From Macrostomum hystrix (lineage: Eukaryota > Animalia > Platyhelminthes): a stretch of 64,000 nt of DNA. This document shows, in pieces, positions 27,061 to 33,822 of the stretch. The notes under the pieces were generated by a model, which was not told where the DNA came from, did not search any database, and was given only the letters and a program-made list of their open reading frames with translations. Position 1 is the stretch's first letter. Each line of letters begins with the position of its first letter. Where the stretch lies: assembly GCA_950097015.1 (NCBI GenBank), contig CATNEN010000030.1, positions 3,410,001 to 3,474,000 of the forward strand, given 5' to 3'. Position numbers and translations under genes: made by a program.

Positions 27061-27512
27061 TACAAGCTATGATGAGGCTTCGGATTTTAACAAACTTATC
27101 TTAAAATATTAAGCAGACCATTAAAAAAACTAAATCCAGATTAAGAACGAATGACTAAATAAATATTAAAAATTTGTCAAGACACAGCAGGCCATGTCTT
27201 TTAGCTTAAAATTAAAATATTAGAAAGTAAAGACAGTAGAAGAAAATAATAAATAATTGTCGATGCATTGTCAAGAGAAAAAACTAATTAGAAAAGTCAC
27301 ATCAAACACAATTAATAGCTGTTAAGATTTTCGTCATTGCTAGAAAAAAACGGTAATCGCTTAGCAAACACTTTAAAAACTGAAATTAGCTCGTAGTAAG
27401 CATAAAAACTTTTGGAATGTACTCTTAGCTTATATAAAACAATCACTATAGCGCGAATTGCTTCAAGAAAGAAGCAATTAAAGAGAATAACAATGTAAAT
27501 GTCAGCGACTCG

Positions 27513-30500
27513 TCACCACCTGTCACAGCAGCCCAATGCGTCGCTATCAGTGAGCAGGTTGGCAATTGGTGAGGCCAGGCTGAGCAGGCGAAATGGTGGG
27601 TGCTCGGCGATGTGGCGCGCGTGCGGCAGACTGTCGGTGATCCAGAAGTGCTCGAAGAGGCCCTGCAGAGTTATTCAAAGGCCAGTAAGTGGACTGAAGG
27701 CTGATGCATTATGCAGGTTTGAAGGCTGAATGGATTCCGAATAAAACCGCACGTTGGCATTTTCTCACCTGACCGTCGGCAAATCGACGCCACGAGTCGC
27801 GCGGAAAAACCGCATGCGTCACGAATGCGCTAACAGCCCTGGCGCCGAGAGACTTCAACGCCGTGGCGCATTGGATTAGGGTGCCTCCGGTCTGCACCAG
27901 ATCGTCGACAATGACCACGTGTCTGCCGGCTGGGGAGCCTTCCTTAACGCGAATAACTCGATTGTCACCGTCGCGCACCTGAGGCCCAATTGAGAGATAA
28001 GGTGATTGAGGAGTAGTAAAAGTATTAGTAGTACTAAAAGCAGTAATATTTAGTAGCAGCTAATAATGAAGCGTGATAATTTAAACAACGCGATTCCCAT
28101 CTAAAATTAAAAAAATGTTTACTCTGCTTTAGACCTCCAAAGCGAAAATGCGCTAGCAATGGACTTTGGATCCTCTTGTTGAGAACTCTTGTCAAATAGG
28201 ACCTTTTGGTCAATACAATGCATAAATGCTTTCACTGAGAGATCGACCAGTCCATTCCGTTCTGACACTCTGATTCTCGCCTGCTTAGCCTAGACCTCTT
28301 AGGAAAAACGTAGACCTTTAAGAAGAAAAGTTTAGCATCGTGGAAAGTGCAACACCAGGAAAAGCAAAGTCAGTCAGTCCTACGCTTACTTGACTCTTAC
28401 CAGAATTACGAGAAGTCTATCAGAAGTGATCTGAGAGACTACTTAGAGTAGTAATACGATTAGAACTGACAGAATTAGAGACCGATTGAAAAGCAAAATA
28501 TTAAACGTTTCAAAACAGCACAGACGGCGCCTTCGAAAAGAAAGAAATCAGTCCACTTATCAGCTGTTCAGTCCATTTGCAAAAATCCACCAGAAAATGA
28601 AATGTGCTGCTTCGAAATCACAAACCTCTAGGTTAGAAGTTCGAATCTGCAACCACAGGTTTCTAAGTTCCCTTAAACAAAGTACAAGGTAAAAAAGCTG
28701 GTTCCAAAATTGCAGCTTGATTCAAAGTGAGCACCTGTCCGATTGGGCCAGATGTGCAGCCGACAGCACAGCCGCAGCTATTGCGCGGTGCATCTGAAGG
28801 CTGCGTACGGCTGATCAGTCCATGGACTGGGGGGACGCCACACCCACCTTCAATTACCCCAGCTAATGCTAGTACCCATTTAACAGCTGGGTGAACTGAA
28901 GCAATGCAGACTTAAGTGTCACGCTAAAGGACACACATTTTTCCAGTGGAGTCAGGAATCGAACCCCCGACCTTCATGTCGTGAGTCCGACGCTCTAACC
29001 ACAAGGCTACAACCTCTACTGTGAGCGCTACCTTTAAGCAGGTGATGACGTCGTCAGCGTGCTCCGGCACGCTGAAGGCCCGATAAAATCGTTTGAAGGC
29101 GCCTTCGTCAGGAAAGGCGATAGCCAGGCCCGGCGAGGCGTCACGGAGGTCCTTCAGCAGCGGATGGAGCAGGTCCATGGCGCTAGTCAGCAGCGGAATC
29201 ACGCAGTCGGTAAAGTAAAAGCGTTCCTGCAGAGCGTGAATGTCGTACACAACTAGCTGGCAGGGGCCGTGGCGCGTTAGAGGAGTGGAGCTCAGGAGTC
29301 TAGCCACGGACATCGCTGTGGCCACTTGGCCTTCCCGATCCACTCGCTCCATGGTGCCGCAGGGGAAGTAGGGCAGCAACAGGGTCAGGGAGCGGACAAA
29401 GTAACGGGGCAGGCTGTGAATGAGGGACACCTGCGGGTTGATGACAGTTTATTGATCGTCATTAAGAATAATGATGGATTAATTATTCTAATTGGGTTGG
29501 TTTTTCCGACTGAAATCATCTGGATTGTCCATTACAATTAAGGTTGGGATTTTCCACTGAAATCATTGGGATTCTCCATTACAATTGGGGCTGGGATTTT
29601 GGACTGAAATCATCGGGATTCTCCTTTACAATTAAGGTTGAGATTTCCCACGGAAATCATCGGGATTCTCCATTACAATTAAGATTGGGATTTCCCACTG
29701 AAATCATCTGGATTCTCCATTACAATTAAGGCTGGGATTTCCCACTGAAATCATCTGGATTCTCCATTACAATTAAGGCTGGGATTTCCCACTGAAATCA
29801 TCTGGATTCTCTATTACAATTAAGATTGGGATTTCTCACTGAAATCATCTGGATTCTCCATTACAATTAAGGCTGGGATTTCCCACTGAAATCATCTGGA
29901 TTCTCCATTACAATTAAGGCTGGGATTTCCCACTGAAATCATCTGGATTCTCTATTACAATTAAGATTGGGATTTCCCACTGAAATCATCTGGATTCTCC
30001 ATTACAATTAAGGCTGGGATTTCCCACTGAAATCATCTGGATTCTCCATTACAATTAAGTTTGGGATTTCTCACTGAAATCATCTGGATTCTCCATTACA
30101 ATTAAGGTTGGGATTTACCACTGAAATCATCTGGATTCTCCATTACAATTAAGATTGGGATTTCCCACTGAAATCATCTGGATTCTCCATTACAATTAAG
30201 GTTGGGATTTCCCACGGAAATCATCGGGATTCTCCATTACAATTAAGGCTGGGATTTCCCACTGAAATCATCGAGATTCTCCATTACAATTAAGGCTGGG
30301 ATTTCCCACTGAATCATCGGGACTTCCTATTGAGACAATAACAATTTGCAATGAAAGTAATTCAAATCTGCCAATAAAATGACTCGGATTTTTTTAGTTA
30401 TTAGTATTACCTATGGAAGGATTGAAATTTTTGCATTCGAGATGATTTAGCCTAGTAGAGTAAAAGATTCCCTAAAAAGGTCGATTTATTTTGTTCACCT

Positions 30501-30753
30501 GTTCAAAAATGACAGCGGGCTCGTGCAGACTAGCCAGAAAAACGACATCCTGACCCGCCATTTGACGCACTTCGCTAATGAAAATATTAGGAAATCCGTC
30601 CGGAAATCGATCCCAGCTCACAATTTCTTTAAATAAGATGAGGCGACTTGTCTGGCTGGCGGCCGCTGAGACAGCGGAATGGTCAGCGATTTCCCGTGCC
30701 AGCTGGGTCATGGAGCTGTGTGCCAGCAGCCATAGCGGTTTCGCGCGCTCAGC
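27513..30753 (-). CDS. Class II (plant PRS3/PRS4-type) ribose-phosphate pyrophosphokinase, 4 exons; no in-frame ATG at the homologous N-terminus
   Basis: Exons 30753-30499, 29430-29032, 27978-27769 and 27662-27513 are all phase 0 with GT-AG introns. Motifs [71 protein letters not shown] and FWITDS match class II PRS. Confidence 0.9.
28740..29015 (-). mobile_element. tRNA-derived SINE in PRS intron 2
   Basis: Full reverse-complement copy of the SINE. The track ORF 28924-29430 merely reads past the splice donor into it. Confidence 0.8.
29500..30325. repeat. 47-bp minisatellite in PRS intron 1
   Basis: Unit gggatttcccactgaaatcatctggattctccattacaattaaggct. Confidence 0.95.
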
Positions 30754-30765
30754 CTTAGCGAATAA
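30754..30765 (-). promoter_or_regulatory. Candidate trans-splice acceptor ahead of the ATG-less first PRS exon
   Basis: Minus strand reads ttttataattttattcgctaag|GCT GAG CGC GCG AAA CCG, in frame with the PRS coding sequence. Confidence 0.55.
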
Positions 30766-30849
30766 AATTATAAAATTCAATGCCGAGCTTCATTGAAAAA
30801 GTTGTTTAATCAAAAAAATAGTTTACTTTATAGATTTACCGCCAATCAA

Positions 30850-31745
30850 TGGGCTAGATCTCGACCTCCCCAGTCTATGGGTTAGACCCGACCTCCCCAG
30901 TCTATGGGTTAGAACCGACCTCCCCAGTCTATGGGTTAGACCCGACCTCCCCAGTCTATGGGTTAGACCCGACCTCCCCAGTCTATGGGTTAGAACCGAC
31001 CTCCCCAGTCTATGGGTTAGAACCGACCTCCCCAGTCTATGGGTTAGACCCGACCTCCCCAGTCTATGGGTTAGACCCGACCTCCCCAGTCTATGGGTTA
31101 GAACCGACCTCCCCAGTCTATGGGTTAGAACCGACCTCCCCAGTCTATGGGTTAGACCCGACCTCCCCAGTCTATGGGTTAGAACCGACCTCCCCAGTCT
31201 ATGGGTTAGACCCGACCTCCCCAGTCTATGGGTTAGACCCGACCTCCCCAGTCTATCGGTTAGACCCGACCTCCCCAGTCTATGGGTTAGACCCGACCTC
31301 CCCAGTCTATGGGTTAGACCCGACCTCCCCAGTCTATGGGTTAGAACCGACCTCCCCAGTCTATGGGTTAGACCCGACCTCCCCAGTCTATGGGTTAGAA
31401 CCGACCTCCCCAGTCTATGGGTTAGACCCGACCTCCCCAGTCTATGGGTTAGACCCGACCTCCTCAGTCTATGGGTTAGACCCGACCTCCCCAGTCTATG
31501 GGTTAGACCCGACCTCCCCAGTCTATGGGTTAGAACCGACCTCCCCAGTCTATGGGTTAGACCCGACCTCCCCAGTCTATGGGTTAGAACCGACCTCCCC
31601 AGTCTATGGGTTAGACCCGACCTCCCCAGTCTATGGGTTAGACCCGACCTCCCCAGTCTATGGGTTAGACCCGACCTCCCCAGTCTATGGGTTAGATCCG
31701 AACTCCTGTCTATGGGTTAGACCCAGATTTCCCCAGTCTATGGGA
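30850..31745. repeat. 27-bp minisatellite between KIAA0753 and PRS
   Basis: Unit atgggttagacccgacctccccagtct. Confidence 0.96.
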
Positions 31746-32274: not shown

Positions 32275-33822
32275 TTATCTACTGTCGCCATTATCAGACG
32301 AGTGCTCAGATTCGAACTCCTGACTTCCATAGTCCACGCCGTCTTCTCCAGTTTTGCTATAATAATCCGCGGTTCGAACGTCGGCCTCTTCAGTCGGCGA
32401 ATAGCCGCCTGCGCGGGCGCCCAGGGCCGACAGAGCCGCCGCGGCGGCCGCCTCAGCGGCGCCAACTCCGGTCTCGTTGGCAACTAGATGGCCGACAATC
32501 GCGTCGCTGGCTGACAGAAGCTCGTCAGCGGCATCGGTCAGCATGTCATCTAGCAGCTGCTCGGCGATGGCGTCAGTCAGCTGAGTTGGCCGGAAGCCAA
32601 TAACGCCAGAATTGGCCACCGACGAGCCGGCGTTCAGGTAGTCCCGATAGCGATCCCGCTGCGACCGGATGGCCTGCACCTCCGCCTGCGTCAGCTGCAG
32701 CGCAGCCGGCTGCCTCGCGCCGGCCACTTCGACAGTGCTGCCAAAAACTGGAGCAGGTCTGGCGCCGTTACGATTGTTGACAAAGCGCAACCCGTCTGGC
32801 GGCTCGGCGCGCCAGTGTCCGTCAGCGGCGCAGATTGGCTCGTCGCCGGCGGCCAAAGCGGCGACCCAAGGGTCGCGAATGTCATCGCCTTCGGCCTCCA
32901 GCTGGCAGAGCCGGTGATCGATGTTGCGTAACTCGGCCAGGCTGCCAGCACCGCTGCGGATCAGCGACACCGCTGAGGCTGACAGTGCCGGAGTGCTGAA
33001 GCCGCCGCCGCCACGCAGGCCGAGCTCGCGCCTGATCTCGGCCAGAACATCGGCCACAATGCGGGCCCGGTCATGATCGGCTACCACCGGAGAAGCCGAG
33101 GACGCTGCGGCTTGGACTGCAGGGGGCGAAGCTCCCAAAGTTGGATTAAAGTGAGGCTGCTGTTGGATTTGCCTTTGCTGCTGTTGCTGCTGCCGCTGTG
33201 GCGGCGGGGGCAGCCCGACTCGCGGACTCCGCGGTCTGGTCGGGAACGGGAGAGCGGCCGGGCGGCGCCTGGCACCGGCGCCAGCGCCGCGTCCTAGAAG
33301 GCGCTCGGCCTCCAGCTCGGCCATGCGCGCCGCGTATTGTTGAACCTCCTCGCGCAGGCGCCGCAATTCCAAAGCTTCGTGACGCTTCATTGAGGCGGCA
33401 TTCTCGCGGGGTAACGGCAGCCTAGCGGAGCCGCCTCCATTTGGGCCGGGCCGCCAGGCTCGATCGGTATCTCGAACCGGCGGCGAATGACTGCGCGACG
33501 GCAATTGCTGCTGCTGCTGCTGCTTCTGTCGTCGCTGCTCAACCGCTGCCTTTCTAAAGATGGCGGTGCGGCCCTGATGGAGGCGACGTTCAACATTTTT
33601 AGGGCCGGGAGGTAGTTTGGCGTCCAGCACCTCCCGGCTGTGCTGGAGCTCGCGCCTGGCCAGCCGGCTCATGAGCTCCATGCGTTGCGGATCCAGGGCC
33701 GATGGTCGCTTCTCTATGAGCACTGGCTGCGGATTGACCGCCACCCTAGTAACCAGGTTGCTAGGCGAAGCCGGCCGGTCTAAATTAAACTGCAACTGGT
33801 TTACTGCCTGGCGCGGATTCAT
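32275..33822 (-). CDS. KIAA0753: Moonraker/OFIP (KIAA0753)-like centriolar protein, intronless, 515 aa
   Basis: N-terminal NQLQFNLDRPASPSNLVTRV...VLIEK...RLARREL and C-terminal RYRDYL...FRPTQLTDAIAEQLLDDMLTDAADEL resemble the two conserved ends of KIAA0753 as recalled. Confidence 0.78.
   Translation of the reverse strand: MNPRQAVNQLQFNLDRPASPSNLVTRVAVNPQPVLIEKRPSALDPQRMELMSRLARRELQHSREVLDAKLPPGPKNVERRLHQGRTAIFRKAAVEQRRQKQQQQQQLPSRSHSPPVRDTDRAWRPGPNGGGSARLPLPRENAASMKRHEALELRRLREEVQQYAARMAELEAERLLGRGAGAGARRRPAALPFPTRPRSPRVGLPPPPQRQQQQQQRQIQQQPHFNPTLGASPPAVQAAASSASPVVADHDRARIVADVLAEIRRELGLRGGGGFSTPALSASAVSLIRSGAGSLAELRNIDHRLCQLEAEGDDIRDPWVAALAAGDEPICAADGHWRAEPPDGLRFVNNRNGARPAPVFGSTVEVAGARQPAALQLTQAEVQAIRSQRDRYRDYLNAGSSVANSGVIGFRPTQLTDAIAEQLLDDMLTDAADELLSASDAIVGHLVANETGVGAAEAAAAAALSALGARAGGYSPTEEADVRTADYYSKTGEDGVDYGSQEFESEHSSDNGDSR

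What the first reader, a model, noticed from the sequence alone, without database searches (positions are those of the whole stretch)
30499..30800. PRPP synthetase lacks its own start codon: AUG probably donated by the spliced leader
Seen: homology to class II PRS extends upstream of the first in-frame Met ([19 protein letters not shown]) to an acceptor, ctaag|GCT, exactly at a codon boundary. The nearby ATGs (ATGAAGCTC, ATGGCTGCT) are out of frame and stop quickly, and I found no upstream coding exon before the KIAA0753 3' end. Known: flatworm spliced leaders end in AUG, which can initiate translation. Inferred: SL-AUG plus this exon gives [11 protein letters not shown]..., a 338-aa protein of typical PRS4 length. 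The gene would then depend on trans-splicing for a full-length product.
Basis: partly seen in the sequence, partly recalled or inferred. Interest (0 to 1): 0.75.

Follow-up and report, generated by a model that had tools for sequence, protein, structure and literature searches.

The report
Spliced leader supplies PRPP synthase start codon
In the flatworm Macrostomum hystrix a plant-type (PRS4-like) PRPP synthase gene has no start codon of its own, and RNA assemblies show the AUG-ending spliced leader joined in frame directly in front of its first codon; this is a well-supported new example of a mechanism already known in flatworms.

Summary
The window comes from the Macrostomum hystrix assembly (220,453,370 bases, 42 contigs). 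A four-exon PRS4-like (class II-like) PRPP synthase gene lies on the minus strand, 30753 to 27513. Its frame is open upstream of the first in-frame Met (Met15), has no ATG, and meets a stop 13 codons upstream of an AG acceptor.

Spliced contigs from three runs of one study read ...CGAAGACTCAATTTATTGCATG|GCTGAGCGC. That is the 3' end of the 35-nt Macrostomum spliced leader, joined at 30753 with its ATG in frame.

- Homologues from animals, a choanoflagellate and plants align right up to this junction, and most have their own Met exactly one residue before it.
- Met15 is a conserved internal residue lying inside helix 1.
- Both M. lignano orthologues are annotated as partial and start at the same codon, with no upstream ATG. 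One keeps a CAG acceptor there.
- Codons 6-14 differ between the species only synonymously.

Translation from the leader AUG is inferred, not shown. The mechanism is known from Cheng et al. 2006. This scan has already confirmed other cases on other DNA of this genome (CHMP6, NDUFA5, SFMBT, PPP2R3C). I class it as a new member of a known kind, of modest interest.

The parts
30754..30755 (-). AG of the trans-splice acceptor (cgctaAG|GCT). The G at 30754 is identical to the last G of the leader, so the aligner extends the match by one base.
   Evidence: contigs match the genome down from 30754, then continue with leader sequence.
30756..30792 (-). Last part of the outron: a T/A-rich tract (ttttataattttattcgct) and the in-frame stop TGA at 30792-30790, with no in-frame ATG.
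30499..30753 (-). Exon 1, 85 codons ([10 protein letters not shown]...AVIFEQ). It is the first coding exon and has no start codon. The donor is CAG|gtgaac.
30709..30711 (-). First in-frame genomic ATG (Met15 of the exon, Met16 of the protein). It is a conserved internal residue of the HPSM/HSSM motif.
30683..30733 (-). Out-of-frame ATG in a strong context (GCTATGG) followed by a 16-codon frame ([16 protein letters not shown]). It starts upstream of the Met15 ATG and ends downstream of it.
   Evidence: read directly from the sequence.
29032..29430 (-). Exon 2, 133 codons ([11 protein letters not shown]...ITCLK). Acceptor cag|GTG, donor AAG|gtagcg.
   Evidence: (the loose end of the contig equals the start of exon 2).
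27769..27978 (-). Exon 3, 70 codons, carrying the PRPP/ribose-5-phosphate loop [14 protein letters not shown].
27513..27662 (-). Exon 4 coding part, 49 codons plus the stop ([14 protein letters not shown]...GCCDRW*).
30842..31744 (.). 27-bp tandem array (33 copies) in the outron or intergenic region, between the acceptor and the upstream gene.
29495..30322 (.). 47-bp tandem array (17.6 copies) inside intron 1.

Best explanation
This is the single PRS4-like (class II-like) ribose-phosphate diphosphokinase gene of Macrostomum hystrix. Its pre-mRNA is trans-spliced at the AG at 30755-30754. The 35-nt spliced leader, which ends in AUG, is joined directly to GCU GAG CGC. The leader's AUG therefore becomes codon 1 of a 338-codon frame, [20 protein letters not shown].... 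The genome provides no start codon for the conserved N-terminus. A full-length enzyme, including its first beta-strand, can be made only from the trans-spliced mRNA. Shown here: the leader-exon junction in RNA-derived contigs, the in-frame ATG, the lack of any genomic ATG, the homology up to the junction, and the same design in M. lignano. Inferred: that ribosomes start at the leader AUG, as was demonstrated for schistosome mRNAs by Cheng et al. 2006.
For: - **Junction.**: in runs X3, X4 and X5, contigs of 1174-1253 nt cover 30754..30496 with no mismatch. They continue upstream with the reverse complement of ATGCAATAAATTGAGTCTTCG, that is CGAAGACTCAATTTATTGCAT plus G. They continue downstream with the start of exon 2, so they are intron-free.
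- **Leader identity.** One search gives the published SL, CGGTCTCTTACTGCGAAGACTCAATTTATTGCATG. Searches find exact copies in this genome followed by gtaag.
- **No retrocopy.** One search finds only one genomic copy of the gene, so a retrocopy does not explain the contigs.
- **No genomic start.** One search shows no in-frame ATG between the outron stop and Met15.
- **Homology to the junction.** In some searches, exon 1 aligns from its first residue. In 30 aligned homologues the initiator Met usually sits one column before the Macrostomum Ala (for example MAQSAKPVLMYSHPSM and MAQVKDDVLLFAHPSM). Met15 aligns with the conserved internal Met of HPSM. In one search the Bacillus subtilis enzyme 1dkr aligns from its residue 7.
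- **Fold.** In one search (AlphaFold model, pLDDT 87.5) the first strand is residues 7-11 and helix 1 is residues 13-30, so Met15 lies inside helix 1.
- **M. lignano.** In some searches both orthologues are annotated as partial and start at the same Ala. Locus L015 has cacAG|GCTGAT, and there is no upstream in-frame ATG.
- **Coding constraint.** In one search, codons 6-14 show 4 synonymous and 0 non-synonymous differences between the species.
- **Blocking ATG.** In some searches, a strong-context out-of-frame ATG in M. hystrix lies between the leader AUG and Met15. Ribosomes that skip the leader AUG would mostly be diverted there.
Against: - There is no ribosome-profiling or peptide evidence, so the actual initiation site was not observed.
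- The RNA evidence is assembled contigs from one study, not raw reads. Contigs drop rare isoforms, so a minor cis-spliced or differently trans-spliced form cannot be excluded.
- The runs are not on record as RNA. Their RNA origin is deduced from the missing introns and the leader.
- The AUG context in the leader (U at -3) is not optimal, although +4 is G.
- One of the two M. lignano copies (L012) has TG instead of AG at the acceptor. In M. lignano, Met15 is the first AUG after the leader AUG.
Confidence: 0.85

Rival explanations
1. The mRNA is trans-spliced as seen, but the leader AUG is skipped. The enzyme is made from the first genomic Met (MTQLA...), giving a protein 15 residues shorter.
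For: The leader AUG lies only 32 nt from the cap and has U at -3. Met15 has a purine at -3 in M. lignano (CTCAATGG). A genome-only gene model of M. lignano (UniProt A0A1I8JGX9) starts there.
Against: Such a product would lack strand 1 and the start of helix 1. The Met is a conserved internal residue in homologues that start further upstream. Codons 6-14 are under purifying selection, with 4 synonymous and 0 non-synonymous changes. In M. hystrix a strong out-of-frame ATG intervenes.
Confidence: 0.07
2. A further, cis-spliced 5' exon with its own ATG exists upstream, for example beyond the 27-bp array. The leader-bearing form would then be only one of several isoforms.
For: About 1.5 kb separates the acceptor from the upstream gene. 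I did not lay reads on that stretch, and contigs drop rare variants.
Against: All three runs give the leader at 30753 and nothing else. M. lignano transcript-based models also begin exactly at this codon and are flagged as partial. The N-terminus with the leader Met already matches the length of the homologues, so no residues are missing.
Confidence: 0.05
3. The locus is a decaying gene that lost its start codon, and the in-frame leader AUG is a one-in-three coincidence.
For: By chance, a third of acceptors would put the leader AUG in frame.
Against: The frame is intact over four exons with canonical splice sites. The gene is expressed and spliced. Catalytic motifs are conserved. The same design is kept in M. 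lignano under purifying selection: 27 synonymous-only against 20 non-synonymous codon differences in exon 1.
Confidence: 0.02

Closest known systems
[quoted passage not shown]
   Same: The leader ends in AUG. The AUG is joined in frame to an ORF whose conserved N-terminus has no genomic start codon. According to PMC9851317, the leader AUG is in frame in 28% of S. mansoni trans-spliced transcripts, and more than 40 cDNAs need it.
   Different: The species is different (a free-living macrostomorph, not a schistosome) and so is the gene (PRS4-like PRPP synthase). Translation was not tested here.
Other leader-AUG-dependent genes of this same genome found by this scan (CHMP6, NDUFA5, SFMBT, PPP2R3C)
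   Same: Same genome, same leader, and the same kind of RNA-contig evidence, according to those notes.
   Different: They concern other loci and other proteins. I did not re-check those reports.
Plant class II PRPP synthases (spinach isozyme 4, KPRS4_SPIOL; Arabidopsis PRS3/PRS4)
   Same: Full-length collinear similarity at about 50% identity for the M. lignano orthologue, similar length, and the shared motifs [21 protein letters not shown](T/S)GGT and FWITDS.
   Different: The gene is animal, with introns, and is trans-spliced. Its nearest relatives are PRS4-like genes of marine invertebrates and choanoflagellates. The phosphate independence and broad donor range that define class II were not tested.
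Class I PRPP synthases (Bacillus subtilis 1dkr, human PRPS1/2)
   Same: Same two-domain fold family. The family profile matches them at E 1e-20 to 1e-25. This genome also holds three class I-type loci.
   Different: They are much more distant. Exon 2 alone finds no solved structure by sequence, and exons 1, 2 and 4 give no significant Pfam match on their own.

Membership tests
mRNA whose initiator AUG is donated by the flatworm spliced leader | The species has an SL RNA whose leader exon ends in AUG, followed by a GU donor. | tested here: met
   exact 35-mers ending ATG and followed by gtaag, in tandem units on C15, C17 and C42.
mRNA whose initiator AUG is donated by the flatworm spliced leader | The leader is joined to the gene's first exon at an AG acceptor in mature RNA. 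| tested here: met
   three runs give ...TTGCATG|GCTGAGCGC at 30753, and the same contig is spliced to exon 2.
mRNA whose initiator AUG is donated by the flatworm spliced leader | The leader AUG is in frame with the main ORF, with no stop between them. | tested here: met
   the AUG directly abuts codon GCT, with no untranslated bases between.
mRNA whose initiator AUG is donated by the flatworm spliced leader | There is no genomic in-frame AUG upstream of conserved, structurally needed N-terminal residues. | tested here: met
mRNA whose initiator AUG is donated by the flatworm spliced leader | Translation actually initiates at the leader AUG. | not testable with these tools
   This needs ribosome profiling, N-terminal proteomics or a reporter assay.
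PRPP synthase (ribose-phosphate diphosphokinase) family | Collinear match to family models, including the PRPP/ribose-5-phosphate binding loop. | tested here: met
   exon 2 matches TIGR01251 positions 71-173 and exon 3 matches positions 200-260 (E 9e-16); exon 3 matches PF00156; the family profile matches solved PRPP synthases.
Class II (PRS4-type) PRPP synthase | The closest sequence relatives are PRS4-type proteins rather than class I. | tested here: met
   the top hits are named ribose-phosphate pyrophosphokinase 4(-like) and include spinach KPRS4. The class I-type loci are separate genes.
Class II (PRS4-type) PRPP synthase | Activity without phosphate, a broad range of diphosphoryl donors, and no allosteric ADP inhibition (criteria as given in PMC3380012). 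| not testable with these tools
   These are biochemical properties and need an enzyme assay.

The most novel reading that the evidence does not exclude
The genomic start codon that other animals have at exactly this position (M-A...) was replaced in the Macrostomum lineage by a trans-splice acceptor. The gene has then depended wholly on the leader AUG at least since M. hystrix and M. lignano diverged. Trans-splicing would be an obligatory on-switch for this PRPP synthase, and a single acceptor mutation (AG to TG, as in the M. lignano copy Mlig028349g1) would silence a duplicate without touching its coding sequence.
Probability: 0.45. Interest if true: 0.4.

Novelty: new member of a known kind. 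Interest (0 to 1): 0.3.

Why it matters
The finding gives a clean, cross-species example of a housekeeping-type metabolic gene that cannot be translated into a full-length protein without spliced-leader trans-splicing.

It also has a practical side for annotation:
- Genome-only gene finders truncate such genes at the first internal Met, as in the M. lignano UniProt model that starts at MAQLAKEI.
- Transcript-based pipelines flag them as partial.

Flatworm annotation pipelines should therefore add the leader AUG at in-frame trans-splice sites.

It adds nothing new to the mechanism itself. That has been known since 2006, and this scan has already seen it repeatedly in this genome.

Tried and rejected
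- **Exon 1 alone against Pfam and NCBIfam** gave nothing significant. This class is too divergent for a single exon. Homology was shown by BLASTP and by alignment instead.
- **Word search with exon 1 alone** found nothing, because the length window excludes full-length relatives.
- **The first profile search (A1)** was swamped by plant PRS4 proteins and showed no Macrostomum protein. A profile weighted towards animal sequences (A3) found the M. lignano orthologues.
- **Alignment A2** was mis-aligned and was discarded.
- **The representative search with exon 2** gave no hit closer than 62% identity.
- **The bacterial promoter/terminator scan** is irrelevant for a eukaryote and was ignored.
- **M. 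lignano gene identifiers** turned up nothing in papers or supplements.
- **Retrocopy of a trans-spliced mRNA** was considered as the source of the contigs and rejected, because there is only one genomic copy.
- **Horizontal transfer from a plant** was considered and rejected, because PRS4-like genes are widespread in invertebrates and unicellular relatives of animals.
- **Reads were laid on 30330-30838 only**, to avoid the flanking tandem arrays.

Full report
**Origin of the window.** The window is G000:C30:3410001-3474000 of an assembly of 220,453,370 bases in 42 contigs. Those are exactly the figures given for Macrostomum hystrix in Wiberg et al. 2023 (PMC10468722, Table 1). [quoted passage not shown]

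**The observation.** The gene lies on the minus strand.
- Exon 1 begins at ctaag|GCT GAG CGC GCG AAA CCG CTA TGG at 30753 and ends CAG|gtgaac at 30499. It has 85 codons, [19 protein letters not shown]...AVIFEQ.
- Read in frame upstream, the genome gives Q*SSALNFIILFAK|AERAK. The stop is at 30792-30790, and there is no ATG before Met15 at 30711-30709.
- The other exons are 29430-29032 (133 codons), 27978-27769 (70 codons) and 27662-27516 (49 codons), with the stop at 27515-27513. All introns are GT-AG.

Each exon was searched by reference. For full-length work I used the M. lignano orthologue returned by the protein search.

**What the gene is.**
- Exon 3 matches PF00156 and TIGR01251 positions 200-260 (E 9e-16). 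Exon 2 matches TIGR01251 positions 71-173.
- An exhaustive search with exon 2 found 562 representatives at E<=1e-10. The best was a Styela clava 'ribose-phosphate pyrophosphokinase 4-like' protein.
- Profile searches returned plant PRS4 proteins, including spinach KPRS4. With an animal-weighted profile they returned PRS4-like proteins of sponges, cnidarians, molluscs, annelids, brachiopods, echinoderms, hemichordates, amphioxus, tunicates, choanoflagellates and Capsaspora.
- It is therefore an ordinary, if little-studied, holozoan gene of the class II-like type, not a plant transfer.
- The genome has one copy and three further class I-type loci.

**The decisive test.**
- The published M. lignano leader is CGGTCTCTTACTGCGAAGACTCAATTTATTGCATG (PMC8629364). 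It has more than 20 exact copies in this genome. In the tandem units it is followed by gtaagacaccg..., which is the SL RNA donor.
- Public runs holding the gene were found. Four runs of one 2020 study hold 36-38% of the sampled words of 27400-30800, which is about the exon share.
- I laid three of them on 30330-30838, a stretch chosen to avoid the flanking tandem arrays.
- Each gave one contig of 1174-1253 nt that matches 30754..30496 without a mismatch. Beyond 30754 it continues with ATGCAATAAATTGAGTCTTCG on the plus strand, which is CGAAGACTCAATTTATTGCAT on the gene strand. The G at 30754 is shared by the genome and the leader.
- At the other end the contig continues with the first bases of exon 2.
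- The mature RNA therefore reads ...TTGCATG|GCTGAGCGC. The introns are removed and the leader ATG is in frame, with not a single base between it and codon 2.
- Because the genome holds only one copy of the gene, a retrocopy cannot account for these contigs.

**Is the leader AUG the start?** Four lines of evidence say that translation must begin upstream of Met15. The leader AUG is the only AUG there.
1. *Homology.* Exon 1 alone aligns from its first residue to residue 3 of homologues (E 7e-24 and 4e-21). In a 30-sequence alignment the initiator Met of most animal, choanoflagellate and plant relatives lies one column before the Macrostomum Ala. Met15 aligns with the conserved internal Met of the HPSM motif. 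The Bacillus subtilis enzyme 1dkr aligns from its residue 7.
2. *Structure.* An AlphaFold model of the M. lignano orthologue (pLDDT 87.5) places strand 1 at residues 7-11 and helix 1 at residues 13-30. A Met15 start would delete a core strand.
3. *Comparison between species.* Both M. lignano copies (PAA76673.1 and PAA47127.1) are annotated as partial and begin at the same Ala. The locus of the first has cacAG|GCTGAT at the same codon boundary, and neither has an upstream in-frame ATG. The neighbouring genes (a moonraker-like gene upstream, strumpellin downstream) are the same. Codons 6-14 show four synonymous and no non-synonymous differences. The 100 nt of outron are barely alignable, with 48 identical columns of 120.
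4. *Scanning.* In M. hystrix a strong-context out-of-frame ATG (30733-30731) opens a 16-codon frame that overlaps the Met15 ATG. Ribosomes that miss the leader AUG would mostly be lost there. This is an inference from the scanning model.

**What is not shown.**
- No data here show ribosomes or peptides.
- The RNA evidence is contigs from one study.
- A fourth run from another study and a differently labelled organism (X1) holds an identical exon 1-exon 2 junction but does not reach the 5' end.

**Possible operon.** The upstream gene ends at 32275 on the same strand. After subtracting the 903-bp tandem array, the gap is about 620 bp. That is under the 1-kb repeat-adjusted criterion used for M. 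lignano operons. The gene could therefore be a downstream operon member, but this was not tested.

**Comparison with what is known.**
- All reported flatworm leaders end in AUG. Cheng et al. 2006 showed that this AUG can serve as initiator. [quoted passage not shown]
- Wiberg et al. 2023 remark that the Macrostomum leader probably includes the final ATG as a start codon.
- This scan has already confirmed the same design for CHMP6, NDUFA5, SFMBT and PPP2R3C elsewhere in this genome. I did not re-check those reports.

**Verdict.** The present case is a well-documented new member of a known kind. The added value is threefold: the conservation across two Macrostomum species, the exact replacement of the position where other animals carry their own ATG, and the lesson for gene annotation. 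My confidence that the leader AUG is the functional start is 0.85, and my interest score is 0.3.

Noticed in passing
L012:3990-4010 compared with L015:3990-4010 (M. lignano NIVC01004564.1 and NIVC01000803.1): The two M. lignano copies of this gene differ at the trans-splice acceptor: cacAG|GCT in one and cacTG|GCT in the other. The second copy may have lost trans-splicing, and with it its start codon, or this may be an assembly error.
   Followed up: partly
Protein P0394 (UniProt A0A1I8JGX9, M. lignano): A genome-only gene model of the orthologue starts at the internal Met (MAQLAKEI...) and is truncated. The transcript-based GenBank models are flagged as partial. Both are annotation artefacts of a start codon donated by the leader.
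   Followed up: partly
Proteins (for example P0286 Lingula, P0320 Branchiostoma, P0281 Paramuricea, P0164 Ephydatia, P0331 Capsaspora): PRS4-like (class II-like) PRPP synthase genes are widespread in marine invertebrates and in unicellular relatives of animals. [quoted passage not shown] No animal member seems to have been characterised.
   Followed up: partly
L003, L004 and L005 (G000:C3:9792961, C7:8561392, C7:9274918): Exact 35-nt leader copies are followed not by the gtaag intron but by unrelated sequence. L003 and L004 share the upstream bases ccgtaaaga with true SL RNA genes, and L005 has ccataaaga. They may be SL pseudogenes, or retrocopies of trans-spliced RNAs with a longer leader 5' end.
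   Followed up: no
G000:C39:12667884-12685526: A leader-like 35-mer with three mismatches (CGGTCTCTTACTGCGAAGACTCTCTTTTTTGCATG) recurs about every 927 bp in a long tandem array.
   Followed up: no
G000:C15:9730-33054, C17:2765-120870 and C42:14534-62132: True SL RNA genes sit in tandem units of about 11.6 kb on three contigs. I did not examine what else the unit carries.
   Followed up: no
window:25773-27061, 29495-30322 and 30842-31744: Three long tandem arrays lie around and inside the gene. Their units are 55, 47 and 27 bp, with 23.5, 17.6 and 33.4 copies at 92-97% identity. M. lignano also has a tandem array just upstream of its acceptor, with a different unit.
   Followed up: no
window:19679-25675 (minus strand): The downstream neighbour is strumpellin (WASH complex subunit 5). 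PF10266 matches its first exon at E 1.6e-137. The order moonraker-like, PRS4-like, strumpellin is the same in M. lignano.
   Followed up: partly
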